DNA of 63,120 nt, filler included, from Octopus bimaculoides (GCF_001194135.2; 3 parts of 3 records of this genome joined end to end with filler, not necessarily neighbours in it), one strand, 5' to 3'; shown: positions 2,465-29,564, numbered from the whole stretch's first letter. Numbers and translations: made by a program. Notes: generated by a model from the sequence alone, not told the origin.

Positions 2465-5400
2465 CAAAAAAATTTTCAGAATTGTAAAACGATAAGAAAA
2501 GATAAGAAGTGAGTTGGAATTAATTTCTTAGTTGTCTTAGTCTACTGCCTCATATGATAGTCGAAGAATTTACTTTGAAATGAAGAAGGAAATAGTTTTT
2601 ACATCGAAAACAAAAAAAAAGGTAAAACCGTTTCCGTAGAAGATATGATTATAATGAAACGAAAATATTTGATAAAGACAGTAAAGTTTCGAGAGTAGGG
2701 CTAGTGAGACTCTAAGAGATATGGTGCTCTAGAACATGCTGAGTCATAGCGGAATTGTGTAAAAAGAAGAAATGAGACCTCGGTGTATATCACATACAAT
2801 TAGATTTTTAATTAACGAAGATCATATGACATTGTCTTCTTAAATGATGGTTTAAACAATTATGTAAATGTGTTAGATTTATTTATCCTTTGTATTCAAA
2901 TAAATGGATACAGCTTCCAATTTTCACCAAGGAGAACACTTTCACTTCTTGATTATCTTTGCAGCGTAACATAGAAACACATACTTTGACAAGCAGAATA
3001 AGATTCTAAATGGTTTCAGCTTGACCATCCGATGACCTGCATTTGTTGCGGTGTAAGGAATGGAATTATTATTAAAGGAGATAAACTAGAAACAATAAAG
3101 TGGCCAGCATCGGGCAGAATATCAGTGTTGTTTCTTACAGACTTGGTATCTACAGAAGTCAATATACACCATGTATGTAAATATTGTAATATAATGATGG
3201 TGATGATGATGATAATAATAATAATTATTATTATGATGATGAATGAAATTCTTGTGTATAGTGCTCAGGTGCACTGCAACTCATCAAAGGTGCATGTACA
3301 GTAGATAGAATTAGGTACAAAAGTCAGGAAAGTGAACAGTGTATGAGTCATGATATACAGGTGTGCATGTGTATGAAGGGTGGGGGGATATCAGGTGTCA
3401 TGTTGGTGAATTTCAGGAAGCATGGAGGTTTTAAAGGATGCAATGTCTTGGCAACTAACAATTGATGCAGGTAGTTTGTTCCATGCTTCAGCAACTCTGA
3501 GTGTGAAAAAATGTTTCCGAAAGTCATGGGAGCTGTGCTGTTTTCTGACTTTGTAGGCATCCTTACATGTGTAAAAATTTGATTTGTATAAGTCTCTGAT
3601 CTTTCTTCAGCTGTACCTGTGTGTGTAGTATGTCTGTCTGTCACTCTCCCTGTCTATCAACACAGACATTTTTCTTTTAATTTTCACAATTATTACTTTC
3701 TACTCTAGGCACAAGGCCCGAGATTTTTGGGGAGGGGACCAGTCGTTTAGATCGACCCCAGTACGCAACTGGTACTTAATTTATCGACCCCGAAAGTATG
3801 AAAGGCAAAGTCGACATCTGTGGAATTTGAACTCAGAACGTAAAGACAGACGAAATACTGCTCAGCATTTCGCCTGATCTGCTAACCACTCTGCCAGCTC
3901 GTCACAATTATTGGTGGCAGACAAACATTCCCAAACATCGGCGTCCCTGAAGCGTTAAAATATGAATGCACAAAGTAGCATTAATGGATTCTGGAGATCA
4001 ATATTTCACTCAAGAGGAAGACGAAATAAATGTTCCCCTCTTGGCCATATTGAAGTCATTTCCTATCTTAAGTAAATTAGGAAGAAATCATCTCTCAGGG
4101 TTCTGGTGGGTTCAGCGAAAGGTATTGGTTTAATAATGGTCTTTTAGAATCGCTCCAACATTAGCAAAAACGCACTTGTACTAGTTCCCGCCACCACCAC
4201 CTACATATATTTCCATAATGGTTAATTCCTCAACCATTGGCATTGGTAAAAAGTGAAATAGCTTCATAACAAAAATCTACATCAGTAGATGGCGATTCTT
4301 GTAGGAAGCCACACTTGATTCTATGAAGAGAAGTGTCTTGTTTCAAGGAATTTGTCATCTTCTGCATATACCCTTTACTCCCATTAATAGCTACTTTACA
4401 GATTAGAAGATGACAGATGAAGGTCACAGCGTCACATTCCCACCGGGCAATGAGAAATATTTGGGTGAATAACACTTGATAAAACTTTGATTTGTTCTAC
4501 AATGTGAATAAATCTGGAATAAAAATAAATCAAATAGATTTGAACCTGTAAAAGTTGTGAGCAGTAAAATAAAGCTGCAATGTTTTTGTATGAAATTCTA
4601 TAACTCTGTCTCAAGCATTTCATCACTCATCAACAGCGAATAAAGACTTGTGTTCATTCACATACACATCGTTATTTTTGCACAAGGCAAATATCTAATG
4701 ATCACATTGCACACACACACACTGATTTATTCCTGTAGGCAGCTGTTTAAACAGTAATTATGAACACTGCTGGCATTCAACTCATGAATCAAACCTCAAA
4801 TATGGTTTAGAGACAATATCAGAAGTGAGTGTGTGTAGAACTGATTGCAGATAACAAAAGGGAATTGGTGACAGAGGAATTTTACTGCACATTTTGTTTG
4901 AAATGGGGTCACTTCAACACCGTGTGCATGTGTGTATATGTGTTAAATAGAATGAAACAACAAAGCCAAGGCTGTGTGGAATTTTCAGGACATTTATAAA
5001 GAGAAAGTTAGTCTTCAGCATACACACACACACAGCATATAAGGTGATGAGCTGGAAGAATCATTAGAATGCCGAGTAGATGCTTAGCGACATTTCGTCT
5101 GTCCCTTACATTCTAAGTTCAAATTCCACCGAGGTCGATTTTGCTTTTCGTCCTTTCAGGGTTGATAAAATAAGCACAAGTTATGAGCACTGAGATTGAT
5201 GCAGTCGAACTGACTCTTCTCCGAAATTGATGGCATTGTGCCAAAATGTAAAACGTATATAAATTGTGGTGGGGTGGGGTGGGGGTCGAGAGAGAGAGAA
5301 TTCCTTACCAAGTCTTTATGAACTAAAAGAATTCACGACGTAAAATTGGTAGACCATTCCTAGTTTAATGACAAATTTAGGGATTATTTAAAACGCCTCA

Positions 5401-7902: not shown

Positions 7903-8076
7903 CTAAGAAGTAGTAGAAGTGGCTTTTCCTGCAGTTTTGGATTCAACTTTGGCGGCAGCTCGTTTGGCCATTTTAATTTTGTGTCTCTCCTCCCGCAGCT
8001 GTCTCCTATCTTCTTTTGGAATTAATTTGTTGTGTTTTCGAGCAAACCGAAGATTTCTCAGATACTTCCTGTCAAC
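7903..8076 (-). CDS. RPL29: 60S ribosomal protein L29 (eL29), last coding exon
   Basis: TTTGCAG acceptor, then VDRKYLRNLRFARKHNK (eL29 motif VDPKFLRNxRFAKKHN) plus a K/R/A-rich tail and stop; phase 0, matching the preceding exon. Confidence 0.95.
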   Translation of the reverse strand, partial: VDRKYLRNLRFARKHNKLIPKEDRRQLREERHKIKMAKRAAAKVESKTAGKATSTTS

Positions 8077-8770: not shown

Positions 8771-8835
8771 ACCTTTCATTGAAGGACATCTGAATCTCTT
8801 TGGTCTGTAAATACCATTACGGTGAGCTTTGCTGT
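8771..8835 (-). CDS. RPL29: 60S ribosomal protein L29, middle coding exon (65 nt)
   Basis: TTTCAG|ACAGCAAAGCTCACCGTAATGGT...ATGAAAGGT|GTAAGT = (N)SKAHRNGIYRPKRFRCPSMKG; phase 1 in, phase 0 out; joins both flanking exons in frame. Confidence 0.95.
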
Positions 8836-8915
8836 CTGAAAGAATGCAATGTGGACATAGAATAAATAATAATACAAGTCCAGATATAAAGTTGTTAATG
8901 TAAATATTTCACAGG

Positions 8916-9058
8916 TCATGTCCCTGGGGTTCAACGGCACACCACAGTCAATGCATGACTGAGATGCTTCCTATCCAGGATTTGATGTTATCTCCTGTAA
9001 ATGTTTACTGGCAGAGATGTAGTCATTAGAGAGGCTACCCTCCGTGGCTGGAGATGTT
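8916..9058 (-). ncRNA. SNORA65: Box H/ACA snoRNA, SNORA65/snR34-like, copy 1
   Basis: Hairpin-ACAUCA (H box)-hairpin-ACA+3 nt; pockets GCCAC/GCCAGU and GAUAGGAA/GCCG; 3' end 80 nt upstream of the RPL29 exon acceptor. Confidence 0.85.
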
Positions 9059-9605
9059 GCAATAAAATGAATGAAAATAATAATGGTTTCAGATTCTGTT
9101 AGAAGGGGAGCAATCTTGGAGGTGAATCAATTACATCGACCCCCCAGTACTCAACTGGTACTTTCTAAAGATGAAATCTTGCAAACCAGATAACCATTCA
9201 CTAATATTAAATCAGGGCAACATGCTAAAAGTAACAGCCAAAACTCATTCAAATCATACTAAACTGAAAGCTAGTGTATCTAGAACTACAATATCTTGTC
9301 TGAATTATAAGAGATGATCATAGCTGCTATGGTTTTCATTGCAAGTCTTAAGGTTATACAAAGGCTACGAAATTGAAAAACTTGAGGGAATTCATAAATA
9401 CAATTATCTAACAATTATTGTTGAAAATACAAGAATCAATTATTTTAAACATTGGTGTAAACTATGTATAAATAGAGGAAAATGGGAAACAGATCCTTGG
9501 AATATTGCTACTATGTACCCCTAAAGCCCTGCTCAAGCCTATTAAAATTAAATCTAAATTTATTGCCCTAACTAAAATTTATAAGATTTAGCTGAAAGTC
9601 AGCGT

Positions 9606-9794
9606 TAGTGTCCCTGGGGTTAAACGGCACACCACAGTCAATGTATGACTGAAATGCTTCCTATCCAGGATTTGATGTCATCTCCTATAAATGTTACTGG
9701 NNNNNNNNNNTCCAGGATTTGATGTCATCTCCTATAAATGTTACTGGCAGAGATGTAGACATTAGAGAGGCTACCCTCCGTGGCTGGAGATGCT
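9606..9794 (-). ncRNA. SNORA65: H/ACA snoRNA copy 2 (interrupted by a 10-N gap with overlapping read ends)
   Basis: All boxes and guides present; 9665-9700 is repeated at 9711-9746 across the gap (assembly overlap). Confidence 0.8.
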
Positions 9795-11418
9795 GCAATA
9801 AAACGAATCAAAAATAATATTGGTTTCAAATTTGACCAGCAATTTTGGTGGAGCAGATGAGTCAATTACATTGACCCCAGTAGTCAACTGGTACTTATTT
9901 TATCAAAAGGATGAAAGGTAAAGTCGACTTTGGTGGAATTTGAACTCAGAACATAGCAACAGGTGACATACTGCTAAGCATTTCATCCAGCACGCTAACG
10001 ATTCTGCCAACTTGCCACCTTAATAATAATATGTAAGAGGAAGAAGTTGATAAACCTTCAATATTCTAAAGATGAAATCTTGTAAACCAAATAACCATTC
10101 ACTAATACTGAATCAGGGCAACATGCTAGAAATAACAGCCAAAACTCATTCAAATCATATTAAAGTGAAGGATGGTGTATCTAGAACTACATTATCTTGT
10201 CTGAATTATAAGAGATGATCATAGCTGCTATGGTTTCGGTTAATTTTAAACGAAGGTTACTGAANNNNNNNNNNNNNNNNNNNNNNNNNNNNNNNNNNNN
10301 NNNNNNNNNNNNNNNNNNNNNNNNNNNNNNNNNNNNNNNNNNNNNNNNNNNNNNNNNNNNNNNNNNNNNNNNNNNNNNNNNNNNNNNNNNNNNNNNNNNN
10401 NNNNNNNNNNNNNNNNNNNNNNNNNNNNNNNNNNNNNNNNNNNNNNNNNNNNNNNNNNNNNNNNNNNNNNNNNNNNNNNNNNNNNNNNNNNNNNNNNNNN
10501 NNNNNNNNNNNNNNNNNNNNNNNNNNNNNNNNNNNNNNNNNNNNNNNNNNNNNNNNNNNNNNNNNNNNNNNNNNNNNNNNNNNNNNNNNNNNNNNNNNNN
10601 NNNNNNNNNNNNNNNNNNNNNNNNNNNNNNNNNNNNNNNNNNNNNNNNNNNNNNNNNNNNNNNNNNNNNNNNNNNNNNNNNNNNNNNNNNNNNNNNNNNN
10701 NNNNNNNNNNNNNNNNNNNNNNNNNNNNNNNNNNNNNNNNNNNNNNNNNNNNNNNNNNNNNNNNNNNNNNNNNNNNNNNNNNNNNNNNNNNNNNNNNNNN
10801 NNNNNNNNNNNNNNNNNNNNNNNNNNNNNNNNNNNNNNNNNNNNNNNNNNNNNNNNNNNNNNNNNNNNNNNNNNNNNNNNNNNNNNNNNNNNNNNNNNNN
10901 NNNNNNNNNNNNNNNNNNNNNNNNNNNNNNNNNNNNNNNNNNNNNNNNNNNNNNNNNNNNNNNNNNNNNNNNNNNNNNNNNNNNNNNNNNNNNNNNNNNN
11001 NNNNNNNNNNNNNNNNNNNNNNNNNNNNNNNNNNNNNNNNNNNNNNNNNNNNNNNNNNNNNNNNNNNNNNNNGGATTAAGCCAACAGACATGTTACTACA
11101 AAATAGCATCAAGTTAGAAGCTACAATGCTTCATTGACTATTGTATCATTACATCTTTCAACACAGATTTGTCAATACATATCCAAAATTATTGCCTGGT
11201 TAAGCATACGCGCTTTTATCTACAGCCAAACTGGGATTATCAACTGAAATAATCCATTTATTTCTTTGATCCAAACCACTCATTAGACAGTGGCCAAGCC
11301 ACAGCTCCACCATAAAGGTCTTAGACAATTATGTCAGCCTCACTACTTCATCTATTGATTTCTTTTATTGTCTATCAAATTCCAGTGTTAACCTCCAAAG
11401 TCTCAAAGTAGAAGATAC

Positions 11419-11470
11419 CTGCCCTTAACATTGTCTAATAAGAATGGACTTCTTCAGCATGGAACCATTT
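11419..11470 (-). other. Candidate 52-nt non-coding/poison cassette exon (a)
   Basis: CTACAG|AAATGGTTCCATGCTGA...GGGCAG|GTATCT; acceptor 76 nt downstream of snoRNA copy 3. Confidence 0.45.
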
Positions 11471-11546
11471 CTGTAGCAAGTCCTTTAACAGAAAACTAAA
11501 TCACTTCAAATTCCACGAGACATTAGCATCTGAAGACAAAATGATA

Positions 11547-11689
11547 AAATGTCCCTGGGGTTAAACGGCACACCACAGTCAATATATGACTGAAATGCTT
11601 CCTATCCAGGATTTGATGTCATCTCCTATAAATGTTTACTGGCAGAGATGTAGACATTAGAGAGGCTACCCTCCGTGGCTGGAGATGCT
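11547..11689 (-). ncRNA. SNORA65: H/ACA snoRNA copy 3
   Basis: Same fold, boxes and guides; ends GGGACATTT. Confidence 0.85.
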
Positions 11690-12823
11690 GCAATAAAACA
11701 GACTTACTTTGTACAATATACAATGTTTATTTGTTGTGTATCTCATCTAGACAAGTCATAGACCTATGGAGTTGTTGTCCTCCCTACTTTGCTGTACACC
11801 AGTCAGACACTGACAGTTCACAGGCACACATCAAGTTGAATCACATCTGAACTAACAATGCTGGCTGCTGTACTCGACAAACCCCAAAAACATTGAGCCC
11901 ATCCCTGTTGCCCACAGCAACGAGACTTGTCAGGTCACATTTGCCAGAATGATTGAGAAAATAACATTAATTTGGTGGTGTGGATGTTGCAGCACAAATT
12001 CTACAAGGACTTCCCTCAAAGACTGCAGAAAAGATTTTAGCGTTAACCCAGTCATGGGTTCTGCTCCTGAGAGATCAACCAGCTGCTATCAAGAAAGTTA
12101 CACTTGAGCAGAAGAGCCAAGCTAATGATGCCTAAAGCCAGTAGGGGGAGCTGCCAGCCATTAGTCACATCATCAGCATCACCCACATGGATGTAAACAC
12201 AAAGGTTTTTTACACACATACATTTTGTGAAGGCTTAATGGTGAGGGTATCTGACTCACGGTCATGAGTTCAATTCCAAACAGCACTCTATATCCTTGAG
12301 CAAGACGCTTCATTTCACATTGCTCCAGCCCACTCAATTGGCAAAAACGAGTTGTATCAGGAGTTCAAAGGGCCAGCCTCTTCATATTGTGTCATGCTGA
12401 ATCTCCGTTAAAGGTAGTTGTGTCTGTGGAGTGGTCAGTCACAAGCAGGCTGTACAGTTGATCAAATCAACTGGAACATTCGTCATCATAACCAATGGAG
12501 TGTCACTGTAAATCTGACAGCAGAGCCTGACACGATCTGCTGGCTCGCCAGGTCCTGTCAACCTGTCCGACCCATGCCAACATGGAAAATGAATGTTAAA
12601 TGGTGTTATGACGACCCAATGATAGCAATACAAGGAGACTAATGCACATCCATAATGGCATAAGTACCATGCTGCAGGATTGAACAAGAAACCATGTGAT
12701 TGTGAAGGAAACTTAAATACCACACAGCTACAAGTGTGCCTAAGGACAAATATACCTTGGAATCTTCTGTAAAAAATATTGTAATTGAATCAAACTGCAG
12801 CACTTATCACTGCTCAAACTAAA

Positions 12824-12965
12824 CTATGTCCCTGGAGTTCAACGGCACACCACAGTCAATGCATGACTGAGATGCTTCCTATCCAGGATTTGATGTTATC
12901 TCCTATAAATGTTACTGGCAGAGATGTAGTCATTAGAGAGGCTACCCTCCGTGGCTGGAGATGTT
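12824..12965 (-). ncRNA. SNORA65: H/ACA snoRNA copy 4
   Basis: Same fold, boxes and guides; ends GGGACATAG. Confidence 0.85.
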
Positions 12966-13536
12966 GCAATAAAATGAATGAAAATAATAATGGTTTCAGA
13001 TTCTGTCAGAAGGGCAGCAATCTTGGAGGAGGTGCTTCAATTACATCGATCCCAGTACTCAACTGGTACTTTCTAAAGATGAAATCTTGCAAACCAGATA
13101 ACCATTCACTAATATTAAATCAGGGCAACATGCTAAAAGTAACAGCCAAAACTCATTCAAATCATACTAAACTGAAAGCTAGTGTATCTAGAACTACAAT
13201 ATCTTGTCTGAATTATAAGAGATGATCATAGCTGCTATGGTTTTCGTTGTAAGTCTCAAGGTTATACAAAGGCTACGAAATTGAAAAACTTGAGGGAATT
13301 CATAAATACAATTATCTAACAATTATTGTTGAAAATACAGGAATCAATTATTTTAAACAGTGATGTAAACTATGTATACATAGAGAAAAATGGGAAACCG
13401 TTCCCTGGAATATTGCTACTTTGTACCCGTAAAGTCATGCTCAAATCTATTGATCCCTAAAAAAGATTTTTTTAAAAATCAAATCTAAACTTATTGCATT
13501 AACTAAAATTATAGGATTTAGCTGAAAGTCAGCGTT

Positions 13537-13679
13537 AAGTGTCCCTGGGGTTAAACGGCACACCACAGTCAATGTATGACTGAAATGCTTCCTATCCAGG
13601 ATTTGATGTTATCTCCTGTAAATGTTTACTGGCAGAGATGTAGTCATTAGAGAGGCTACCCTCCGTGGCTGGAGATGCT
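13537..13679 (-). ncRNA. SNORA65: H/ACA snoRNA copy 5
   Basis: Same fold, boxes and guides; ends GGGACACTT. Confidence 0.85.
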
Positions 13680-13843
13680 GCAATAAAACAGACAACAGAA
13701 TAGAAGTTACTATAGGACACTCAACAAAGCCTCACTCCTTAACATTCACAGTATCCTGTCACATGTAATGCCTATTTATTTGTATTGTTTTGAATTAACC
13801 ACGCATTATCTGGTAGCATCGATGTGAATGATATGATTGTTGG

Positions 13844-13927
13844 TTTTAGAATGACACTGCAAGGTAGGTGTGAGAGGCCAGACATTGCCGACCTCTCACT
13901 TCTACCCCCAACAATGTTATTCTGAAA
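13844..13927 (-). other. Long imperfect stem-loop (pri-miRNA-like) in the RPL29 intron
   Basis: AGAAT.ACATTG / GGTAG / GTGAGAGG / TCGG pair with CTGG / CCTCTCAC / CTACC / CAGTGT.ATTCT. Confidence 0.55.
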
Positions 13928-14355
13928 CAAGCAGAATGTTTTGGCCAGGTTAAATGCTAAATGGATTAAACGGACAAAAATTGACATCTCTTTGCATGTC
14001 ACATCCTTATCAAGACTGAAACAAGTTAATGTTAGTATAATAAAAATAAAATAAAAAAATGATTCATTTATTGGCCAGAAGGGCTAATCAGCAGCAGCCT
14101 ACAAGAGTTGAAGGATTTCTGTTGATTCAATTCACAGAAGAAAACATTAATGGCTATCTATGAATTTAGCAAGAGCTACGATAAACAGTTCATAGTAACT
14201 GGATTGAAAAGCCAACACTACATTGCCATGAAGGACACCAGCACCTAAAACACACCTTAATAACACTTAAACGTCATTAGGAAAAGTAAATATTTTAAAA
14301 GTAATTTATTCACTACTTCTGAAATGATTCAGAGAAAAGTTAGGGAATTTACAGG

Positions 14356-14497
14356 ATATGTTCCTGGGGTTAAACGGCACACCACAGTCAATGTATGACT
14401 GAAATGCTTCCTATCCAGGATTTGATGTCATCTCCTGTAAATGTTTACTGGCAGAGATGTAGACATTAGAGAGGCTACCCTCCGTGGCTGGAGATCT
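14356..14497 (-). ncRNA. SNORA65: H/ACA snoRNA copy 6
   Basis: Same fold; basal pair of hairpin 2 is U-A instead of U-G (CCAGGAACATAT). Confidence 0.85.
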
Positions 14498-16387
14498 TTC
14501 AGTAAATCAGATGGGAATATAGGAGGAACACAAGACAAAGAAGTTACCATTGGACATTTGGCAAACAGAGGAACTTGTAACCTAACTGTGATCACAGAGT
14601 TCAAGTACTTCATTCTAATTTAAGATTTCAATATTTAATTAGATAATAAACTAAACAACATTTTTACTGAGTAAGGCCAGTAGTTGTTCATTCACACTAA
14701 ATTAAAAGATATTTTTGTATCTAGAATTACATTAATTATCTAGAATTACATCAATCTGGTCTGAAATCACAGACACAAATGCAACAAATACTATTCAATA
14801 GAAAAACACTGGGAAACTCATTTTATCAAAAGGATGAAAGATAAAGTCGACTTTGGTGGAATTTGAACTCAGAACATAGCAACAGGTGACATACTGCTAA
14901 GCATTTCATCCAGCACGCTAATGATTCTGCCAACTTGCCACCTTAATAATAATATGTAAGAGGAAGAAGTTGATAAACCTTCAATATTCTAAAGATGAAA
15001 TCTTGTAAACCAAATAACCATTCAATAATACTGTATCAGGGCAACATGCTAGAAATAACAGCCAAAACTCATTCAAATCATATTAAAGTGAAGGATGGTG
15101 TATCTAGAACTACATTATCTTGTCTGAATTATAAGAGATGATCATAGCTGCTATGGTTTCGGTTAANNNNNNNNNNNNNNNNNNNNNNNNNNNNNNNNNN
15201 NNNNNNNNNNNNNNNNNNNNNNNNNNNNNNNNNNNNNNNNNNNNNNNNNNNNNNNNNNNNNNNNNNNNNNNNNNNNNNNNNNNNNNNNNNNNNNNNNNNN
15301 NNNNNNNNNNNNNNNNNNNNNNNNNNNNNNNNNNNNNNNNNNNNNNNNNNNNNNNNNNNNNNNNNNNNNNNNNNNNNNNNNNNNNNNNNNNNNNNNNNNN
15401 NNNNNNNNNNNNNNNNNNNNNNNNNNNNNNNNNNNNNNNNNNNNNNNNNNNNNNNNNNNNNNNNNNNNNNNNNNNNNNNNNNNNNNNNNNNNNNNNNNNN
15501 NNNNNNNNNNNNNNNNNNNNNNNNNNNNNNNNNNNNNNNNNNNNNNNNNNNNNNNNNNNNNNNNNNNNNNNNNNNNNNNNNNNNNNNNNNNNNNNNNNNN
15601 NNNNNNNNNNNNNNNNNNNNNNNNNNNNNNNNNNNNNNNNNNNNNNNNNNNNNNNNNNNNNNNNNNNNNNNNNNNNNNNNNNNNNNNNNNNNNNNNNNNN
15701 NNNNNNNNNNNNNNNNNNNNNNNNNNNNNNNNNNNNNNNNNNNNNNNNNNNNNNNNNNNNNNNNNNNNNNNNNNNNNNNNNNNNNNNNNNNNNNNNNNNN
15801 NNNNNNNNNNNNNNNNNNNNNNNNNNNNNNNNNNNNNNNNNNNNNNNNNNNNNNNNNNNNNNNNNNNNNNNNNNNNNNNNNNNNNNNNNNNNNNNNNNNN
15901 NNNNNNNNNNNNNNNNNNNNNNNNNNNNNNNNNNNNNNNNNNNNNNNNNNNNNNNNNNNNNNNNNNNNNNNNNNNNNNNNNNNNNNNNNNNNNNNNNNNN
16001 NNNNNNNNNNNNNNNNNNNNNNNNNNNNNNNNNNNNNNNNNNNNNNNNNNNNNNNNNNNNNNNNNNNNNNNNNNNNNNNNNNNNNNNNNNNNNNNNNNNN
16101 NNNTGACTATTGTATCATTACATCTTTCAACACAGATTTGTCAATACATATCCAAAATTATTGCCTGGTTAAGCATACGCGCTTTTATCTACAGCCAAAC
16201 TGGGATTATCAACTGAAATAATCCATTTATTTCTTTGATCCAAACCACTCATTAGACAGTGGCCAAGCTACAGCTCCACCATAAAGGTCTTAGACAATTA
16301 TGTCAGCCTCACTACTTCATCTATTGATTTCTTTTATTGTCTATCAAATTCCAGTGTTAACCTCCAAAGTCTCAAAGTAGAAGATAC

Positions 16388-16439
16388 CTGCCCTTAACAT
16401 TTTCTAATAAGAATGGACTTCTTCAGCATGGAACCATTT
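16388..16439 (-). other. Candidate 52-nt non-coding/poison cassette exon (b)
   Basis: CTGCAG|AAATGGTTCCATGCTGA...GGGCAG|GTATCT; acceptor 76 nt downstream of snoRNA copy 7. Confidence 0.45.
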
Positions 16440-16515
16440 CTGCAGCAAGTCCTTTAATAGAAAACTAAATCACTTCAAATTCCACGAGACATTAGCATCT
16501 GAAGACAAAATGATA

Positions 16516-16657
16516 AAATGTCCCTGGGGTTAAACGGCACACCACAGTCAATGCATGACTGAAATGCTTCCTATCCAGGATTTGATGTCATCTCCTATAA
16601 ATGTTACTGGCAGAGATGTAGTCATTAGAGAGGCTACCCTCCGTGGCTGGAGATGCT
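16516..16657 (-). ncRNA. SNORA65: H/ACA snoRNA copy 7
   Basis: Same fold, boxes and guides. Confidence 0.85.
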
Positions 16658-17616
16658 GCAATAAAACAGACAGGAATAGACATGGCATGGACGAATACAA
16701 GTTACTATAAAAGATTTGATCAACTTTAGCATTTAATCCAACCAAATTATTCTCTGTTTTAAGTTCAACCTAGCCAGATCTTATGTCTCCTACAATGTAA
16801 TTTTGAGATTATACAATCACATCACTGAAATCTCAATGCCACAAGGTGATGATCAGTTGAAAATAATATGAATAAATAAGCATTACATTTGACAGAGTAA
16901 TTTGAATGCGAAGGCATTAAACACAAGCATTTGACATCCCTATGCAGCCCAGCTCAAGTACTCAAGTCTAAGTAAAAAAATAATTTAAAATGTGAATTTT
17001 ATAAATGTAATTACACAATGGTCATTGCTGTTAATATAACCATCTACCGATGCCAGTACTGCCTGACTGGTCCTCATGCCAGCGGCACATAAAAAGCACC
17101 CACTACACTCTCAGAGTGGTTGGCGTTAGGAAGGGCATCCAGCTGTAGAAACATTGCCAGATCGGATTGGAACCTGGTGCAGCCTTCTGGCTTACCAGCC
17201 CTCAGTCAAACCGTCCAACCCATGCCAGCATGGAAAGCGGATGTTAAATGATAGTGATGATGATGATCTACATCAATTTGTTGTGTAAGTAAATATTGTA
17301 ATCCTGTGAAAAGCAACCAAACCTCACTACCCTCCACCTGCTAACCCAACCAGGTTCAAATGAAACTGTTGACACACAAAACCACAAAACATCCTAAAAG
17401 GACAAAATGTCTGAGTCCTGTGATCGTGCAAAGACTCCATCTTTGAGGGATTTCATCAATAATACTGCTTCGAGGACTTTACTGATCTATTTATTTAACT
17501 GCAAAAATTATGAGTTACCAAGGATACCACAGTTAAAACACACACAGATGGACCTCCACAACAGTTGCATTTCCACTTACAAGTCATCCATCAACACAAG
17601 TCTATACAGAAGTTAC

Positions 17617-17668
17617 CTCATCTGAAAACTATCTCGAGGGAATGGACTTCTTCAGCATGGAACCATTC
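17617..17668 (-). other. Candidate 52-nt non-coding/poison cassette exon (c)
   Basis: TTGCAG|GAATGGTTCCATGCTGA...GATGAG|GTAACT; acceptor 54 nt downstream of copy 8; in frame with the first coding exon it reads R-M-V-P-C-stop. Confidence 0.45.
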
Positions 17669-17722
17669 CTGCAACTAGTCCTCAAGTTCCATGAAACATT
17701 AGCATCCGAAGACAAAATGATA

Positions 17723-17864
17723 AAATGTCCCTGGGGTTAAACGGCACACCACAGTCAATGCATGACTGAAATGCTTCCTATCCAGGATTTGATGTCATCT
17801 CCTATAAATGTTTACTGGCAGAGATGTAGTCATTAGAGAGGCTACCCTCCGTGGCTGGAGATAG
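17723..17864 (-). ncRNA. SNORA65: H/ACA snoRNA copy 8
   Basis: Same fold, boxes and guides; homology ends at the 5' basal stem. Confidence 0.85.
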
Positions 17865-18389
17865 GCAAAAGTGGAAAACTCAGAGCAAACCAAATGTTTA
17901 TACAACTAAAGATGGATGTATGGTTGAGAAACTTGTACCCAAACTGTATAGCCATGTGGGTTTGGGATTCTGCCCCTCTGCATGGCACTTGGGCAAGCAT
18001 CTGCTACCACAGCCTTGTGAGAGGATTTGGTGAATGGAAACTGAAAGAAGCCCATCCGTGCATGTGTGTGTACCCTAGTCTAGACATCACGTGACGGTTA
18101 TAAATGTTCCATCATCATCATCATACAAGCTGTGTTTTCTGTTTCCAGAGTTCCATGAAAAACATGCCTGAGCCATGAGGAATATTAGCATACTTTGGAA
18201 CTGGTGAGAATTGGTGACAAGAAGGGCAACTGGGTGCACAAAATCCAAGAAATTCTGTCTGAACCCTGCTTGCATGGGTCAGATGAAATGAACTCATCCA
18301 GACCCAACATTGGGGGAGACAGACAGAGAGAAAATACACCCAAGTCAAATTCTGAACAACAATAGTAAAAATAAAACAATGATTAACAT

Positions 18390-18554
18390 ATAGGTGCAGG
18401 AGTGGCTGTGTGGTAAGTAGCTTGCTTACCAACCACATGGTTCCGGGTTCAGTCCCACTGCATGGCACCTTGGGCAAGTGTCTTCTACTATAGCCTCGGG
18501 CCGACCAAAGCCTTGTGAGTGGATTTGGTAGACGGAAACTGAAAGAAGCCCGTC

Positions 18555-18628
<74 letters not shown>

Positions 18629-18815
18629 GTGTTTGCGTGTCTGTGTTTGTCCCCCCACCATTGCTTGACAACCGATGGTGGTGTGTTTACCTTTCCTTAA
18701 CTTAGCAGTTCGGTAAAAGAGACCGATAGAATAAGTACTAGGCTTCCAAAGAATAAGTCCTGGGGTCGATTTGCTCGACTAAAGGCGGTGCTCCAGCATG
18801 GCCGCAACAAGTAAA
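18390..18815 (+). mobile_element. SINE family B copy (tRNA-like head GGAGTGGCTGTGTGGTAAG...GGTTCAGTCCC, internal TA microsatellite)
   Basis: Further copies or fragments at about 17905-18065, 23120-23280, 25245-25380, 28245-28370(-), 28985-29330, 34935-35325(-), 37500-37725, 39940-40130(-), 46560-46780(-), 46840-47240(-), 47275-47430, 48385-48570 and 62550-62945(-). Confidence 0.8.
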
Positions 18816-18872
18816 AGAAAATAGAGAAAGAGATAGAAAATAGTAAAAATAATTAAATAAAACGAAACTCAC

Positions 18873-18909
18873 TTTGATTATGATTTGTATGATTCTTTGA
18901 CTTGGCCAT
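18873..18909 (-). CDS. RPL29: 60S ribosomal protein L29, first coding exon
   Basis: ATGGCCAAGTCAAAGAATCATACAAATCATAATCAAA|GTGAGT = MAKSKNHTNHNQ, the invariant eL29 N-terminus; upstream acceptor TTTCCAG. Confidence 0.95.
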
Positions 18910-19164
18910 GTTGTGGAACTGGAAGTCTGGAAATAAAAAGTTACGAGAACACCCTGAATAAACACCATAAAATATATAGTTTATTAAACATACATTTTGA
19001 ATATGTGTGAGCCATAGGGCAAACAATAAAACCCTGATGCTGCTGCTAGCTAAGTTCCCTACTCTATACACTTTTTCGCTCGGTTGAGGAAACTGAAAAT
19101 AAGCACCAGTACAGGCCCAGTAGCCTCAATAAATATAGATTTGGATTATTACTAATCAAAATCT

Positions 19165-19966: not shown

Positions 19967-20132
19967 ATGGCACGAAATGATCCACTCACACATCTTCAGT
20001 CGGACACGAAAGACATTGAGAAACAGAATCTGTCCAGTGCTACCAGTTCCTTGCTTCTCAATGAAACGGAATTGGCTCTTACTTATGTCTCGGTTACTCT
20101 TATAGGAATTATCATCATTACAGGCACCACAG
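19967..20132 (+). CDS. Class A GPCR, coding exon 1 (N-terminus with NLS/NET glycosylation sequons, most of TM1)
   Basis: MARND...YVSVTLIGIIIITGTT-G|GTAAGT; the phase-1 junction recreates the TM1 GN motif with the next exon. Confidence 0.8.
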
Positions 20133-20460
20133 GTAAGTCTTCAGTTTTTAATTCCCTTTAACAAAACATGGTCACAATTTATTTTATCTTAGAGTGCTCA
20201 AGTATACAGAAGGCTAACTTTTTAACAATGCTACAAAAGCCAGACCCAGCAATTTCTATTTCGCTGTGCTTCATTAAAATCAGACTCTACTCCTCTCAAT
20301 GCCTCGATCTCTTTTTTTATTTGAAACCCCTTTGATAGTATATTTCTGTTGCATTGCTTTTGCCTCAATTCATTTGGGGAAATGACAAAGAATTTAAACT
20401 GGAGTTGGTTTGGAGCAAAATGGTATCAAGAGGGTTTGAGCAGTTGTCACAGAATATACA

Positions 20461-20688
20461 TTAACCCTTTAGTGTTTAAACCGACTGTATCCGGCCCAGA
20501 TATTCTACACATTTTATGCTCAAACTGGCCAGAACCAGCCTCTCACACATACCCTGCAATGTCATTCTAGAAATAAGCAATTACATCTTTCCTATCTTGA
20601 AGCTACGAAATAATATCAGACAATTCTTTTTAAATGTGAATAAATAAGGACTACTTTTGACAAATTATTCTGAATGCTAAAGGGTTAA
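20461..20688. mobile_element. piggyBac-type MITE (TTAA-CCCTTTAG...CTAAAGGG-TTAA)
   Basis: Perfect terminal inverted repeats with TTAA at both ends; a decayed relative lies at about 16725-16920. Confidence 0.75.
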
Positions 20689-21791
20689 TAGCTTTGATAG
20701 GCTATTAAGCTGTGAACGTCTATTCTTATTCACAAATTGTTACCAAATCTAAGATTGTGTGTGTGTGCGCGCTTGTGCACATGCATGTATGTGTGTATCA
20801 ACTGACTGAAAACAATTAAGCACTTATAGATAGTGATGGTGGAACTATGACATTTAGAGGAATAAAACTCCATCAATATTTATTTGACAGGGATTAGTCT
20901 TTCACTGCCAACAGAATCAAGTTGAATAAACTGCTGAAGGTAAAACATGCAGTCCCAACTTATCCCTCTAAATGAAAGAGAGAGAAACACACACACACAC
21001 ACACAACAGCGATCCTAGATTACTCACATGTTCCTCACCAATGAATGAGATGGTAAAATAATGATAAGCAGGCCAAAACTGATGCTTCCCACACCAACCA
21101 TGGACAATTAATAGGTATTAACCAACATTCATATTTAGAAGAATATTACGGAAATTAGTTAATATTGAGTTGATGGTAGCAAAAAATTATATTAATAGAT
21201 CAAACAGTGGAATATAGTTTATTTTTGTAAGAAGAAATCTGGTCTTCAGAGAGGAAAATGTGTAAAAGGGCACAAAATTGTAAATTTCAAAATAAGAGAG
21301 AGAGAGTGAGAGAGAGAGAGAGAGAAGATGCATGGAAGAAAAGAACAGATACAAGAATTAAAGCAATGCGAGAATCAATACTAGAATATTTTGGTATTTA
21401 TAGTGGCAAACACAGGTGTTTGTTGGTATTATTAAGTTGGGCCCCAAAGCAATAATATGTAAAACTTTTACTGTAATCAAATAACTCAAAATTGAATTTA
21501 TAGAAGGCTATCTTCATTACAATTATGATAGTGAAATAAAATTAAACTTCATTAAAAGGTAGAATTGTAAGGAGGAAGGAATTAGGGAGCCAGAAGGGAA
21601 CAAAAGTTGGGAGTATATGTATATAGAGGAAAGGAGGCATATAAACACAGGTGTTACTTAAAGCAGAGAATAATAGTAGAGTATCAACACACACACACAC
21701 ACATGTATACAACACCTTTCCAGCTGTCATAAAGTCAGATTTGTGATTTTAAAAATATTTTTTTAGGCTTGCATGCCACTGAAACTTTTTT

Positions 21792-21857
<66 letters not shown>

Positions 21858-24626
21858 TCTAAATACATGTGAATGTTTAACACACCAGGGGCAGACCCAA
21901 ATGAAGAATTACTCCAATATTTTGATAAGTGCAGCCATGTCTCGTGTGCCCTGCTTCTTTGGAAAGGCTGGCCATGCCTGATCTTCACCATCGACCCCTG
22001 ATGTAGGGATTATAGAAGGTGCCATTTTCAGAGGCAGAGGCCCTCATTTTCCTGCTGACGGAGCAAGTGGGGAGAACCTCAGTCCAAGACTTGACACCTT
22101 AGTTTACTAAAATGGTTAAAGGCAGAATTGGTCTCAGCAAGATTTCAACCAAGAGCATGGAGTATTAAAACAAATAACACAAAGCATTTTCTATGCAATG
22201 CTATAACTGTATGCTTGTGGGCTTTTCATCCTTCAGGGGTTGCTAAATTAGATCTTAATCAAAATCTGTCCTCAATTCCCCACTTTGAATATGTTGGAGT
22301 ATGAGGAAGGGCTGAACACACAAGACAAACCTTCCTCTAGAAGAGGTCCAGTAATGTATTATAGAAATAGGTTAACTGGAATATGGTCATAAATAATATT
22401 TGTGGATGGTTATTGCTTGTGGTTAAATGAAGTTTTTCACTGCATCTTCTTTATGTATCTCTCATCTCGAGCGAGATCGTTGCCAGTGCCCCTGGACTGG
22501 CTCCTGTGCAGGTGGCACGTAAAATACACCATTTTGAGCGTGGCCGTTGCCAGTTCCGCCTGACTGGCCTTCGTGCCGGTGGCACGTAAAAGCACCCACT
22601 ACACTCTCAGAGTGGTTGGCGTTAGGAAGGGCATCCAGCTGTAGAAACTCTGCCAAATCAGATTGGAGCCTGGTGTAGCCATCTGGTTTCACCAGTCCTC
22701 AGTCAAATCGTCCAACCCATGCTAGCAAGGAAAGCGGACGTTAAACGACGATGACGATGATCCACACTGGTGAAAGGATGGGTGACTGAATTAAAACCCT
22801 AACCCTAACCCTAACTGCTGTTTAAAAATAACAGGTTCCCACACACAAGTAACAGAATTCTTGTACAGAAATATAATCAAAATGTTCAGTGACACAGAAT
22901 TCAGCTTTGGGGTCAAATGTGCTGTTGCAGATGAGGGCATAAGTGTAATGGGAACACTTAGAAAGGGTTGGGTTGTAGAATATAAAAGTTCCAAGACTAC
23001 AAAGGGATAAATAAGGAATAGAAGCTGCAAGACAAAAGGTAATAGAGAATGGCAGTTCTCTGTGAGAACTGCATGAATTCAGTGGGAGTGTGGAGTTGGC
23101 TAATTTCTATTTAGCCAACATGGTTATGTGGTTGGAAAGTTAACTTCCAAACCTTGTGGTATCAAGGTTCAGTCCCACTGCATGGAACTTTGGGCAAATG
23201 TCTTCTACTGTAGACTTGAGCCAGTCAGAGTCTTGTGAGTTGATTTGATAGATGGAAACAGAAGCAGCTTTTCATATATAATGTATGTGCATGTTTGTGT
23301 TTCTCTCAGGTTCTTTTGAAGAAAATTCAAACTAAATATGTCAACTAAAACCCTTCTCATACAATAGTTATATAAACCCGCTATTAATTACATTTACTGA
23401 TAACAGAGATGCTGGTAATGATGAGGAGAAACTCCAGTTGTATGACTGGTCATAGAAATATTTACTTTTATCAATGCTAGGTGAATGAGAAACCTTTAAA
23501 GTGATAATCCCCACTAATCTGAAAAGAGGAGAAAAAAAGAAAAAGAAAAAAACCCCAATTCCTATCTTTACTGACTCCATAGCAACAGCAACCACAGCTT
23601 CTAAATTGAAAGCGCTAAAGAAGAGATAAGTAAATACTTACTGAGATAACCATGGAGAGACCGACTCTGAAATCCCCATAAACCCGAACATCTAAGGAAA
23701 AGTTGGCTTTCATGTTGAGCCTTAACAACAGCTGCCACCTCTAAGTTTTTTTAAGAGCAGGAAGAACTAAAAAGTGCGGAAACTGTTTGAAACAGACGCA
23801 AGAATATTTGCTATAGTGATTAAATATTATTAATGGGGATGGNNNNNNNNNNGGGGGGGGGGGGTAGTTTTCATTGGTTTTAAATAGATAAGACGGAAAT
23901 TATCTAGCCTAAGTTTATAATGCTCAAGAAAGATTTGAAATTAGCAGATTAGGTGATAGATCCAATTTATTTTAAGTAATACTAACATTATTGATGTGTG
24001 ATTATACCTTGAAATGAAGCACAATTTAATTGAAAATAAAGCTACCTGAGATAACAAGATAGATCAAAGAGATTCCTATGAAATTACTCAAGAACAACAA
24101 AATAACTGCAAATCTGCTGTAGAAAGACCTATTTTGGCATTTTCTATTGAAAACAGTCTGTACACACATAGGAAGATGTTGGACTGTGACTAGCATTGAT
24201 TCCAACACCTCGTCATTAGTTTTGATCTGGTGTCACAATGTGCCCTGTACAGTCTGTGAAGCAGTTGATAAATAAGCAGACAAGGGGAACATTTAGTCTC
24301 GTCTTATCGAGGACATGACATCTTCTCTGGTGTTGCTGCCATGGGAAATATAACATGGTATATGGTGAAAACTGGTCGGGGTTAGGGTACTGAATCAAAA
24401 AAAACTAAACCAAAAATATAACAGGATACGATTGTTCCAGTTGGGGTACAAAAACAGTGAGTCCCCAAAAGACTTACTCAAGACTGTGATGATCTGCTTC
24501 ACACAAGACACAATGGAAAACACACATAAAATGAAGTTCTTTACTTTCCAAAATCAAATCAACATACACCATACAGAAGAGAAATATCAACATGGCTATA
24601 ATCATTGTCTTTTTTTATTTTCACAG

Positions 24627-24830
24627 GAAACATACTGGTTATTCTGGCTGTGAGAACCTCCAAGAAATTACAGACTCCTTCCAATATTTTTATTGTCAAC
24701 CTCAGTGTAGTGAACCTGCTGTTTGACTTGGGTGTGTTACCATTCCATGCTTACACCAATATTCACAAAGCAGCTGGAATAAGCCCATTACTATGCAGAC
24801 TTGTGGCACTTGTAGACTATGCATTAACAG
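24627..24830 (+). CDS. Class A GPCR, coding exon 2 (TM1 end, TM2, start of TM3)
   Basis: TTTTCACAG|GAAACATACTG...TTAACAG|GTAAGG; 204 nt, phase 1/1; GNILVILAV...NIFIVNLSVVNLL...LCRLVALVDYALTG. Confidence 0.9.
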
Positions 24831-29512: not shown

Positions 29513-29564
29513 TTCCCATGCCGGGAATCGAACCCGGGCCGCCTGGGTGAAAGCCAGGAATCCT
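29513..29564 (-). pseudogene. 5'-truncated tRNA-Glu(UUC) copy
   Basis: AGGATTCCTGGCTTTCACCCAGGCGGCCCGGGTTCGATTCCCGGCATGGGAA: anticodon arm, T arm and 3' acceptor strand; first ~20 nt missing. Confidence 0.85.

What the first reader, a model, noticed from the sequence alone, without database searches (positions are those of the whole stretch)
8916..17864. At least eight copies of one H/ACA snoRNA amplified inside a single RPL29 intron
Seen: a ~142-nt unit repeated 8 times (8916, 9606, 11547, 12824, 13537, 14356, 16516, 17723), all in host-sense orientation and separated by 0.5-2 kb spacers. Each folds as hairpin (CAUCUCC/GGAGAUG)-ACAUCA-hairpin (UCCUGG/CCAGGG)-ACA+3 nt. Established: vertebrate intronic snoRNAs are usually released one per intron by debranching and exonucleolytic trimming, and human U65 is hosted by RPL12, not RPL29. 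Inference: a lineage-specific dosage amplification that needs extra splice events or endonucleolytic cuts to release each copy. Two N gaps in the intron could hide more copies.
Basis: partly seen in the sequence, partly recalled or inferred. Interest (0 to 1): 0.9.

Follow-up and report, generated by a model that had tools for sequence, protein, structure and literature searches.

The report
Repeated snoRNA genes in octopus RPL29
One intron of the octopus ribosomal-protein gene RPL29 holds at least eight (13-15 in related species) near-identical genes for a small RNA that guides two conserved modifications in the ribosome's catalytic centre; this many-in-one-intron layout is rare in animals but already known from flies and rice.

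Summary
Eight copies of a ~140-145-nt unit lie on the minus strand, all in sense, inside the 10,037-nt intron between the first two coding exons of eL29/RPL29. The window is Octopus bimaculoides. Each unit has a hairpin, H box (ACAUCA), hairpin and ACA. Its two guide pockets match, uniquely and 54 nt apart, the two large-subunit rRNA sites targeted by yeast snR34 and human U65/SNORA65. Rfam's SNORA65 model scores only 19-26 bits against a threshold of 70.

The array is not an assembly artefact. Gap-free assemblies of O. sinensis, O. vulgaris and Argonauta hians carry 14, 15 and 13 sense copies in the same intron. The last copy always ends 80-82 nt before the 3' splice site. Two gastropod RPL29 loci have none.

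Units are more conserved than their spacers (95.8% vs 89.7%), and only the units align between Octopus and Argonauta.

How the internal copies are released is unresolved. Splice-like motifs flank only some copies and are not conserved. Cleavage and trimming of unprotected spacer is the best guess.

Intronic snoRNA clusters are already described in rice and Drosophila, so this is a new member of a known kind, of moderate interest.

The parts
18873..18926 (-). RPL29 exon carrying the start codon (ATG 18909-18907). It ends ...CAAA| before the 5' splice site GTGAGT (GT at 18872-18871). The upstream boundary at 18926 (after ccAG) is inferred.
   Evidence: tblastn MAKSKNHTNHNQS; sequence read
8836..18872 (-). 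Host intron of 10,037 nt (including estimated gap lengths) that contains all snoRNA copies.
   Evidence: The public gene models of O. bimaculoides, O. sinensis, O. vulgaris and A. hians span it as one gene whose product reads straight from exon 1 into exon 2.
   Evidence: R1 168.9 bits; fold
16516..16659 (-). snoRNA copy 7.
   Evidence: R1 175.4 bits. Its downstream flank is 98.6% identical to that of copy 3.
14356..14500 (-). snoRNA copy 6.
   Evidence: R1 171.0 bits; best Rfam SNORA65 hit, 25.9 bits
13537..13681 (-). snoRNA copy 5.
   Evidence: R1 170.4 bits
12824..12967 (-). snoRNA copy 4.
   Evidence: R1 172.0 bits
11547..11691 (-). snoRNA copy 3.
   Evidence: R1 169.8 bits
9606..9796 (-). 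snoRNA copy 2, interrupted by the 10-N gap at 9701-9710. The same 37 nt flank the gap on both sides. Collapsing that overlap gives one intact 144-nt unit.
   Evidence: 121.7 bits across the gap
8916..9060 (-). snoRNA copy 1; 3'-most in the transcript. H box ACAUCA at 8988-8983, ACA at 8921-8919. The unit ends 80 nt before the 3' splice site.
   Evidence: The same 80-82 nt distance holds in O. sinensis, O. vulgaris and A. hians.
8771..8835 (-). RPL29 exon 2 (..NSKAHRNGIYRPKRFRCPSMKG).
7903..8076 (-). RPL29 exon 3, coding part up to the stop TAG at 7905-7903.
10265..11072 (.). Assembly gap inside the array. Its flanks are 98.6% identical to the flanks of the gap at 15167-16103.
15167..16103 (.). 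Assembly gap inside the array.

Best explanation
This is a tandemly amplified array of genes for one box H/ACA snoRNA inside the first coding-region intron of Octopus bimaculoides RPL29. The snoRNA is the octopod counterpart of yeast snR34 and human U65/SNORA65.

Shown:
- Each unit has the hairpin-H-hairpin-ACA layout.
- Its 5' pocket (GCCAC / GCCAGU) and 3' pocket (AUAGGAA / GCCG) can pair around the two uridines of LSU rRNA domain V that correspond to yeast psi2826 and psi2880 (E. coli 2457 and 2511), next to the peptidyl-transferase centre.

Inferred history:
- The 3'-most copy sits 80-82 nt upstream of the 3' splice site in four species. It is probably the ancestral intronic gene.
- The others arose upstream of it by repeated unequal crossing-over of 0.4-2 kb blocks, and the array is still turning over.
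- The units are kept alike by selection, gene conversion or both.

Inferred mechanism:
- H/ACA proteins assemble on every unit of the nascent RPL29 pre-mRNA.
- The intron is spliced out in one piece and debranched.
- The unprotected spacers are removed by endonucleolytic entry plus 5'-3' and 3'-5' exonucleases that stop at each snoRNP.
- One host transcript would then yield many guide RNAs.

My confidence in the identity and reality of the array is about 0.9. My confidence in this route of release is about 0.45.
For: Anatomy:
- Eight copies with R1 E about 1e-49.
- The single-sequence minimum-free-energy folds give two hairpins with internal pockets.
- 93.8% of cells are paired in the proposed structure, against 40-53% when partners are slid. 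There is one compensatory pair and several one-sided compatible changes.
- Invariant columns coincide with the lower stems, the guide strands, the A positions of the H box and the ACA. Variation falls in the loops, the 5' leader, the linker and the 3' tail.

Function:
- SNORA65 is the only Rfam family hit by all eight copies.
- The bipartite motifs ACUGGC-UN-GUGGC and CGGC-UN-UUCCUAU each occur exactly once in a eukaryotic LSU rRNA (L015, Rfam RF02543, 2672 bits). They lie 54 nt apart, which is 2880 minus 2826. Each motif turned up once in 2000 shuffles.
- snR34 guides psi2826 and psi2880 and is the homologue of U65 (PMC5778458). psi2826 corresponds to E. coli 2457 (PMC11121408).

Reality and age:
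- 14, 15 and 13 sense copies lie in the same intron in N-free assemblies of O. sinensis, O. vulgaris and A. hians.
- Flank classes are shared and collinear between O. bimaculoides and O. sinensis.

Constraint:
- Orthologous units are 95.8% identical against 89.7% for their flanks (Fisher p = 2e-8).
- Between Octopus and Argonauta introns, 195 of 203 alignable segments are the units.

Single intron:
- All four public gene models join exon 1 directly to exon 2.

No universal cis signal:
- The downstream flanks fall into five unrelated classes. Splice-like motifs flank only a subset of copies and are absent in Argonauta.

Precedent:
- Intronic snoRNA gene clusters are known in rice and Drosophila (PMC2780460).
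Against: - No RNA data. Neither expression of any copy nor its ends are shown.
- The Rfam SNORA65 score is far below threshold (19-26 bits against 70).
- Target-to-box distances fall outside the usual 14-16 nt. The 3' pocket has 17 nt. The 5' pocket has 23-24 nt, unless the variable 10-11-nt linker is looped out.
- RNAalifold's own consensus reproduces the 3' hairpin but folds the 5' half differently.
- Fold energies are not exceptional (z from -0.7 to -2.0).
- Covariation is thin because the sequences are so alike.
- Higher unit conservation could come from gene conversion by one functional copy rather than from selection on every copy.
- A few copies in the other species carry changes in a guide strand or lower stem.
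- The endonuclease step has no sequence evidence.
Confidence: 0.7

Rival explanations
1. Nested or alternative splicing. Cryptic splice sites in the spacers place each unit, or many of them, in its own small intron. Each snoRNA is then released by the ordinary route of one lariat, debranching and trimming. The spacer 'exons' are removed afterwards or end up in non-productive transcripts.
For: - In the Octopus species a subset of copies has GTAACT or GTAAGT 10-47 nt upstream.
- A subset also has a branch-point-like CTGAC/CTAAC followed by TTTCAG 3-40 nt downstream.
- Both occur together around copies 5 and 6 in the window (13537-13681 and 14356-14500) and around five or six copies each in O. 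sinensis and O. vulgaris.
- A 52-nt AG...GT-bounded segment lies downstream of window copies 3 and 7.
Against: - About half of the copies have no 5'-splice-site-like motif within 100 nt.
- The GT of the candidate mini-exon is CT in O. sinensis.
- None of these motifs, and no spacer sequence at all, is conserved in Argonauta.
- The GTAACT sits in a generally conserved paralogous flank, so it is not specifically preserved.
- The public gene models show one intron.
Confidence: 0.2
2. Only the terminal copies, or only the 3'-most canonical copy, mature. The array then accumulates as snoRNA-capped long non-coding RNA (sno-lncRNA-like), or the internal copies are degraded with the intron.
For: - In mammals, two snoRNAs in one intron protect the sequence between them and give sno-lncRNAs (PMC4234469).
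- Exonucleases alone cannot separate internal units.
- Only the last copy has the conserved position 80-82 nt from the 3' splice site.
Against: - Internal copies keep intact boxes, stems and guide strands in four species, while the spacers decay beyond alignment.
- Gene conversion from the last copy could mimic this pattern, so the argument is not decisive.
Confidence: 0.15
3. Artefact or mobile element. The repeats would be an assembly duplication of one or two real copies, or copies of a snoRNA-derived retroposon or SINE that happened to land in this intron.
For: - The window is a short-read assembly with three gaps in the array.
- It contains 98.6-99% identical blocks beside those gaps.
- SINE fragments lie 45-60 nt upstream of several copies.
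Against: - Three independent N-free assemblies show 13-15 copies.
- All eight window copies have different upstream flanks and different core sequences.
- All 50 copies are in sense and confined to one intron.
- None lies in the flanking 8-10 kb of any locus or in the other ~21 kb of the window.
- There are no poly(A) tails next to the units.
Confidence: 0.03

Closest known systems
Intronic snoRNA gene clusters of Drosophila melanogaster (box H/ACA) and rice
   Same: Several snoRNA genes lie in sense within a single intron of a host gene, contrary to the one-snoRNA-per-intron habit of vertebrates and yeast (PMC2780460; PMC2656528; Huang et al. 2004 J Mol Biol 341:669, cited in PMC2246290). From my own knowledge, the fly clusters also consist largely of isoforms of the same H/ACA snoRNA.
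   Different: - Different phylum (Mollusca, Octopoda).
- A single snoRNA species amplified to 8-15 copies.
- Long spacers (0.25-2 kb) full of SINE debris.
- Presence in two octopod families.
- The primary fly and rice papers were not readable here, so copy numbers there could not be compared.
Human U65/SNORA65 and yeast snR34
   Same: Two-hairpin H/ACA guide whose 5' and 3' pockets address the two LSU domain V uridines 54 nt apart (yeast psi2826 and psi2880) (PMC5778458). The 3'-pocket strands UAGGAA...UGUGCCG match the Rfam consensus.
   Different: - Scores only 19-26 bits against RF00302 (threshold 70).
- The 5' hairpin carries a 10-11-nt extra linker between the guide strand and the lower stem.
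- The 3' pocket is 2 nt longer than the Rfam consensus.
- Human U65 is a single gene hosted by RPL12 (my own knowledge), not a multi-copy gene in RPL29.
SNORD116/SNORD115 arrays of the human Prader-Willi region and their sno-lncRNAs
   Same: Tens of tandem, near-identical snoRNA copies within one host transcription unit. When two copies share an intron, the stretch between them is stabilised as a sno-lncRNA (PMC4234469).
   Different: Those are box C/D orphan snoRNAs in a non-coding host, normally one per intron. Here an rRNA-guide H/ACA snoRNA sits in one intron of a ribosomal-protein gene.
Polycistronic snoRNA clusters of yeast, plants and trypanosomatids
   Same: Many snoRNAs are cut out of one precursor by endonuclease plus exonucleases (reference list and text of PMC2780460).
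   Different: Those precursors are independently transcribed and often mix different snoRNAs. No RNase III-type signal was recognisable in the octopus spacers.

Membership tests
Box H/ACA snoRNA | Hairpin-hinge-hairpin-tail secondary structure with an internal loop (pocket) in each hairpin | tested here: met
   RNAfold gives this structure for all seven uninterrupted copies. 93.8% of cells are paired across 35 copies from three species, against 40-53% for slid controls. Caveat: RNAalifold proposes a different 5' half, and all 5' stem pairs are invariant, so covariation cannot decide between the two.
Box H/ACA snoRNA | H box ANANNA in the hinge | tested here: met
   ACAUCA (Octopus) or ACAUUA (Argonauta) directly follows the 5' hairpin, with A1, A3 and A6 invariant in 50 copies.
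Box H/ACA snoRNA | ACA box three nucleotides from the mature 3' end | tested here: inconclusive
   An ACA follows the 3' hairpin directly in all eight window copies and in 34 of the 35 aligned copies; the exception is Ah07 (L002 14021-14163), where a one-base deletion leaves GAACA. The mature 3' end cannot be known without RNA data.
Box H/ACA snoRNA | Bipartite complementarity of each pocket to a target RNA around an unpaired U-N | tested here: met
   The 5' pocket gives 6+5 bp and the 3' pocket 4+7 bp with unique sites in a eukaryotic LSU rRNA.
Box H/ACA snoRNA | Target uridine about 14-16 nt upstream of the H or ACA box (the box acts as a ruler, PMC5778458) | tested here: inconclusive
   Counted on the alignment: 17 nt for the 3' pocket and 23-24 nt for the 5' pocket. 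The excess in the 5' hairpin is a 10-11-nt linker, which is the most variable part of the unit. If it is looped out, the stacked length is about 13-15. Whether the 5' pocket is active cannot be decided from sequence.
SNORA65 / U65 / snR34 | Rfam RF00302 gathering score (70 bits) | tested here: not met
   No match at gathering threshold. All eight copies score 19.3-25.9 bits, with E from 0.25 to 7.9. I therefore file it as a functional counterpart and probable distant orthologue, not as a certified Rfam family member.
SNORA65 / U65 / snR34 | The two pockets guide the LSU uridines equivalent to yeast psi2826 and psi2880 | tested here: met
   The predicted target uridines are 54 nt apart in ...AACUGGC-U-UGUGGC... 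and ...GUCGGC-U-CUUCCUAUC.... snR34 targets are given in PMC5778458 and PMC11121408. This is an in-silico result only.
Intronic snoRNA gene cluster (rice / Drosophila type) | Two or more snoRNA genes, in sense, within one intron of a host gene | tested here: met
   8 copies in the window and 13-15 in the relatives lie between the exon 1 donor and the exon 2 acceptor of RPL29. Unannotated internal exons cannot be excluded.
Intronic snoRNA gene cluster (rice / Drosophila type) | All members are matured from the host pre-mRNA intron | not testable with these tools
   No transcript data are available.
snoRNA-derived retroposon / SINE | Dispersed copies in both orientations, with A-rich tails and target-site duplications | tested here: not met
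   All 50 copies are in sense and confined to one intron. None occurs elsewhere in the window or in the locus flanks. No A-tails are present. The whole genome was not searched.

The most novel reading that the evidence does not exclude
The array is more than redundant copies. Because eight to fifteen snoRNPs assemble on a single excised intron, octopods might release them by a dedicated route, such as nested or recursive splicing or a specific endonuclease. Alternatively they might accumulate stable multi-snoRNP long RNAs from a ribosomal-protein intron. The amplification, present in both Octopus and Argonauta, might also be selected to keep two pseudouridines at the peptidyl-transferase centre fully modified. 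That would make the locus a natural system for asking how animal cells resolve many snoRNAs from one intron.
Probability: 0.15. Interest if true: 0.6.

Novelty: new member of a known kind. Interest (0 to 1): 0.4.

Why it matters
- It shows that the 'one snoRNA per intron' habit of animals is broken on a large scale in octopods, for a guide RNA that targets the ribosome's catalytic centre.
- The arrangement has persisted, with rapid turnover of copy number (8+, 14, 15 and 13), in two octopod families.
- It gives a concrete locus for studying release of internal snoRNAs from an intron. Nearly every copy is distinguishable by SNPs.
- It offers a case of concerted evolution of a small-RNA gene array.
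- It warns annotators that Rfam thresholds miss this snoRNA in molluscs.
- It does not reveal a new kind of element.

Tried and rejected
- Rfam at gathering threshold found nothing in the window or in the cephalopod loci. Only sub-threshold SNORA65 hits appeared.
- A mini-exon downstream of copies 3, 7 and 8 (minus strand of 11410-11484, 16379-16453 and 17608-17682) looked like cag|...|gtatct. Its donor GT is CT in O. sinensis and the segment is absent in Argonauta, so I dropped it.
- I tested whether unit flanks are duplicated copies of the real exon 1 donor or exon 2 acceptor regions. Local alignments were no better than shuffles, except one marginal case: 1 of 500 shuffles for O. bimaculoides, not reproduced in O. 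sinensis or O. vulgaris. Rejected.
- AUAGGA as an alternative H box would sit at the canonical 14-nt distance. It is not conserved (ACCGGA, AUCGGA and GUCGGA in O. sinensis) and it overlaps the lower stem, so I rejected it.
- I searched gastropod RPL29 loci for a SNORA65-type snoRNA with R1, with Rfam at E up to 5 and with a guide-motif descriptor. None was found.
- Squid, cuttlefish and Nautilus could not be tested. No decapodiform or nautiloid eL29 appeared among the 120 listed protein hits, and no eukaryotic genome collection is searchable by DNA.
I solved this through its cluster member P0121.
- Huang et al. 2005 (PMC1370813) is not held.
- Tandem Repeats Finder sees only the ~400-nt period blocks in Argonauta. 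Its period limit of 500 hides the 640-nt Octopus blocks.
- No paper describing a cephalopod snoRNA array was found.

Full report
**The observation**

The eight aligned copies share a ~145-nt core whose flanks diverge. The RNA-like strand is the minus strand.

A covariance model built from 35 copies (R1) places the copies at:
- 17723-17867
- 16516-16659
- 14356-14500
- 13537-13681
- 12824-12967
- 11547-11691
- 9606-9796
- 8916-9060

Scores are 168-175 bits. The copy split by Ns scores 122 bits. Nothing else in the piece matches.

**The gaps**

The 10-N gap at 9701-9710 lies inside copy 2. It has the same 37 nt on both sides. This is the signature of two overlapping contig ends. Collapsing the overlap gives one intact unit, although two separate copies cannot be excluded.

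The two large gaps (10265-11072 and 15167-16103) have flanks that are 98.6% identical to each other. A further 300-nt block is 99% duplicated. Copy order and number in this short-read assembly are therefore uncertain, and eight is a lower bound.

**The host gene**

tblastn and direct reading give eL29/RPL29 on the minus strand:
- ATG at 18909.
- Donor CAAA|GTGAGT, with GT at 18872-18871.
- Acceptor tttcag| before 8835.
- Exon 2 at 8835-8771.
- Exon 3 from 8076 to TAG at 7905-7903.

The spliced product is identical to O. bimaculoides XP_014784768.1. The public locus L007 is the same sequence with the same gaps. All copies are in sense within the 10,037-nt intron. The last copy ends 80 nt before the acceptor.

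**What the unit is**

RNAfold gives, for every uninterrupted copy:
- a 5' hairpin with lower stem AUCUCC/GGAGAU, an internal loop and an upper stem;
- the hinge ACAUCA;
- a 3' hairpin with lower stem UCCUGG/CCAGGG, an internal loop and an upper stem;
- ACA.

Across 35 copies from three species, 93.8% of the proposed pairs are standard, against 40-53% when partners are slid. There is one compensatory pair (C-G to U-A) and several one-sided compatible changes. Covariation is thin because the copies are so similar.

In 50 copies from four species the invariant columns are the lower stems, the four guide strands, the A positions of the H box and the ACA. Changes fall in the loops, leader, linker and tail.

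RNAalifold's own consensus keeps the 3' hairpin but folds the 5' half differently. Fold energies are unremarkable, with z from -0.7 to -2.0. The structure therefore rests mainly on the conservation pattern and the guide logic.

**Which snoRNA it is**

Rfam finds nothing at gathering threshold. At relaxed threshold, all eight copies hit SNORA65 and no other family recurrently. The scores are only 19-26 bits against 70. The match lies mostly in the 3' pocket (UAGGAA...UGUGCCG).

To test function rather than resemblance, I fetched eukaryotic rDNA from metagenomes. I confirmed one locus, L015, as LSU rRNA (RF02543, 2672 bits) and read its domain V sequence.

The motifs implied by the pockets each occur exactly once in that rRNA, 54 nt apart. 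They are ACUGGC-UN-GUGGC for the 5' pocket and CGGC-UN-UUCCUAU for the 3' pocket. Each turned up once in 2000 shuffles.

Yeast snR34 is the homologue of human U65 and guides psi2826 and psi2880, which are also 54 nt apart (PMC5778458). psi2826 corresponds to E. coli 2457 (PMC11121408). The octopus RNA is thus a functional counterpart, and probably a diverged orthologue, of snR34/U65/SNORA65.

Two departures from the norm:
- The distance from pocket to box is 17 nt in the 3' hairpin.
- It is 23-24 nt in the 5' hairpin, against the usual 14-16. The excess is a 10-11-nt linker that is the most variable part of the unit. Whether the 5' pocket works cannot be told from sequence.

**Is the array real, and how old is it?**

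The closest eL29 proteins led to three further loci. These assemblies have no Ns at the locus.

| Species | Locus | Sense copies in the exon 1-exon 2 intron |
|---|---|---|
| O. bimaculoides (window) | L007 | 8, lower bound |
| O. sinensis | L001 | 14 |
| O. vulgaris | L006 | 15 |
| Argonauta hians | L002 | 13, plus two decayed copies |

Counts are from R1. The last copy ends 80-82 nt before the acceptor in all four species. For box C/D snoRNAs, about 70 nt upstream of the acceptor is reported as the optimal position (PMC1821038).

The flank classes of the window copies recur in O. sinensis in collinear order. O. sinensis has extra copies in positions that may correspond to the window's gaps.

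Copy number and block structure differ even between O. sinensis and O. vulgaris. For example, O. vulgaris has a run with a 642-644-nt period at L006 18884-20812. Argonauta has ~400-nt period blocks. The array is therefore still turning over by tandem duplication.

Copies within a species share substitutions that copies of other species lack. This points either to concerted evolution or to independent expansions.

Two gastropod RPL29 loci (Bradybaena and Lymnaea) have no such snoRNA by three methods. The Babylonia locus is intronless. Squids and Nautilus could not be tested.

**Constraint**

Between orthologous copies of O. bimaculoides and O. sinensis, the units are 95.8% identical and the 200-nt flanks 89.7% (83% if indels are counted). 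Fisher p = 2e-8.

Between Octopus and Argonauta introns, 195 of 203 alignable segments are the units. The rest are short repeat fragments.

**How the copies could be released**

Established knowledge says that exonucleases trimming a debranched intron stop at the first and last snoRNP. Two snoRNAs in one intron then yield a sno-lncRNA in mammals (PMC4234469).

I looked for signals:
- Some Octopus copies have GTAACT or GTAAGT 10-47 nt upstream.
- Some have CTGAC/CTAAC followed by TTTCAG shortly downstream.
- Only about a third of the copies have both.
- About half have no donor-like motif.
- A candidate mini-exon loses its GT in O. sinensis.
- The flanks are not detectably derived from the real splice junctions.
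- Nothing in the spacers is conserved in Argonauta.
- The immediate downstream flanks fall into five unrelated classes, so there is no common cis signal outside the unit.
- The public gene models join exon 1 directly to exon 2.

I therefore favour snoRNP-defined protection, with non-specific endonucleolytic entry and exonucleolytic trimming of the naked spacer (about 0.45). Nested splicing gets about 0.2. Maturation of terminal copies only, or long snoRNA-capped RNAs, gets about 0.15. None of these was tested with RNA.

**Comparison with what is known, and verdict**

[quoted passage not shown] The title of Huang et al. 2004 states that the fly clusters are of box H/ACA snoRNAs (reference list of PMC2246290). 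Animals otherwise mostly follow one gene per intron (PMC1821038, PMC2656528).

No paper in the held library describes a cephalopod snoRNA array.

The finding is real and well read by the first stage. It is a new member of a known kind: an octopod-wide, 8-15-copy array of the snR34/U65-type guide in RPL29. I rate its interest as moderate.

Noticed in passing
window about 19967-27523, + strand (ORF 26729-27523): A rhodopsin-type 7TM receptor gene (Pfam 7tm_1) lies head-to-head upstream of RPL29. The same neighbour is present in O. sinensis, A. hians, Lymnaea and Babylonia, so the RPL29-GPCR pairing is conserved across molluscs.
   Followed up: partly
L005 2184-2252, 3490-3558, 3951-4017; L004 2571-2653, 4339-4415, 5192-5267: Both gastropod RPL29 loci carry three sense copies of a SNORD57-like box C/D snoRNA within 4 kb upstream of the RPL29 start codon. 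Two of them reach Rfam's gathering score. No counterpart was found upstream of the octopus gene. Multi-copy snoRNAs around RPL29 may be a wider molluscan habit.
   Followed up: partly
L002 11784-11911 and 15446-15565: Two weak matches to the snoRNA model (26 and 22 bits) lie inside the Argonauta array. They look like decayed copies, so the array also loses members.
   Followed up: no
L004 9056-9104, minus strand (antisense to RPL29 intron 1 of Bradybaena similaris): A stretch GCCAC-GGGAGAAGGUAG...CUAUAAAUCU-GCCAGU resembles the octopus 5' hairpin together with both of its guide strands. No recognisable 3' hairpin follows (R1 6.2 bits, E 3.5). It may be chance or a relic.
   Followed up: partly
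L003 6001-6180: The Babylonia areolata eL29 gene found here is intronless (180 nt, translates directly), yet it sits next to a 7tm_1 gene as in the other molluscs.
   Followed up: no
window 3723-3871, 9842-9984, 13017-13079, 14829-14907; also 128-204, 5107-5183, 31247-31323: Families of SINE-like dispersed repeats occur both inside the array's spacers and outside the gene. One fragment (…CCAGTTGAGTACTGGGGTCGATGTAATTGA…) lies 45-60 nt upstream of many snoRNA copies and may have promoted unequal crossing-over.
   Followed up: partly
window 441-821, minus strand: A 126-aa ORF has the look of a transposon-derived protein tail (…IPVIVGALGMINKG…). It was not searched.
   Followed up: no
window 18549-18650: An (AT)n/(GTAT)n microsatellite lies in the intron between the donor site and the first snoRNA copy.
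   Followed up: no
window 29518-29569, minus strand: A sub-threshold Rfam tmRNA hit (19.7 bits against 47). It is probably a tRNA-like part of a SINE.
   Followed up: no
L006 8001-35768: The O. vulgaris gene model for eL29 (CAI9721862.1, 220 aa) fuses an upstream reading frame through the 5' UTR and adds a foreign C-terminus. It looks like an annotation error.
   Followed up: no
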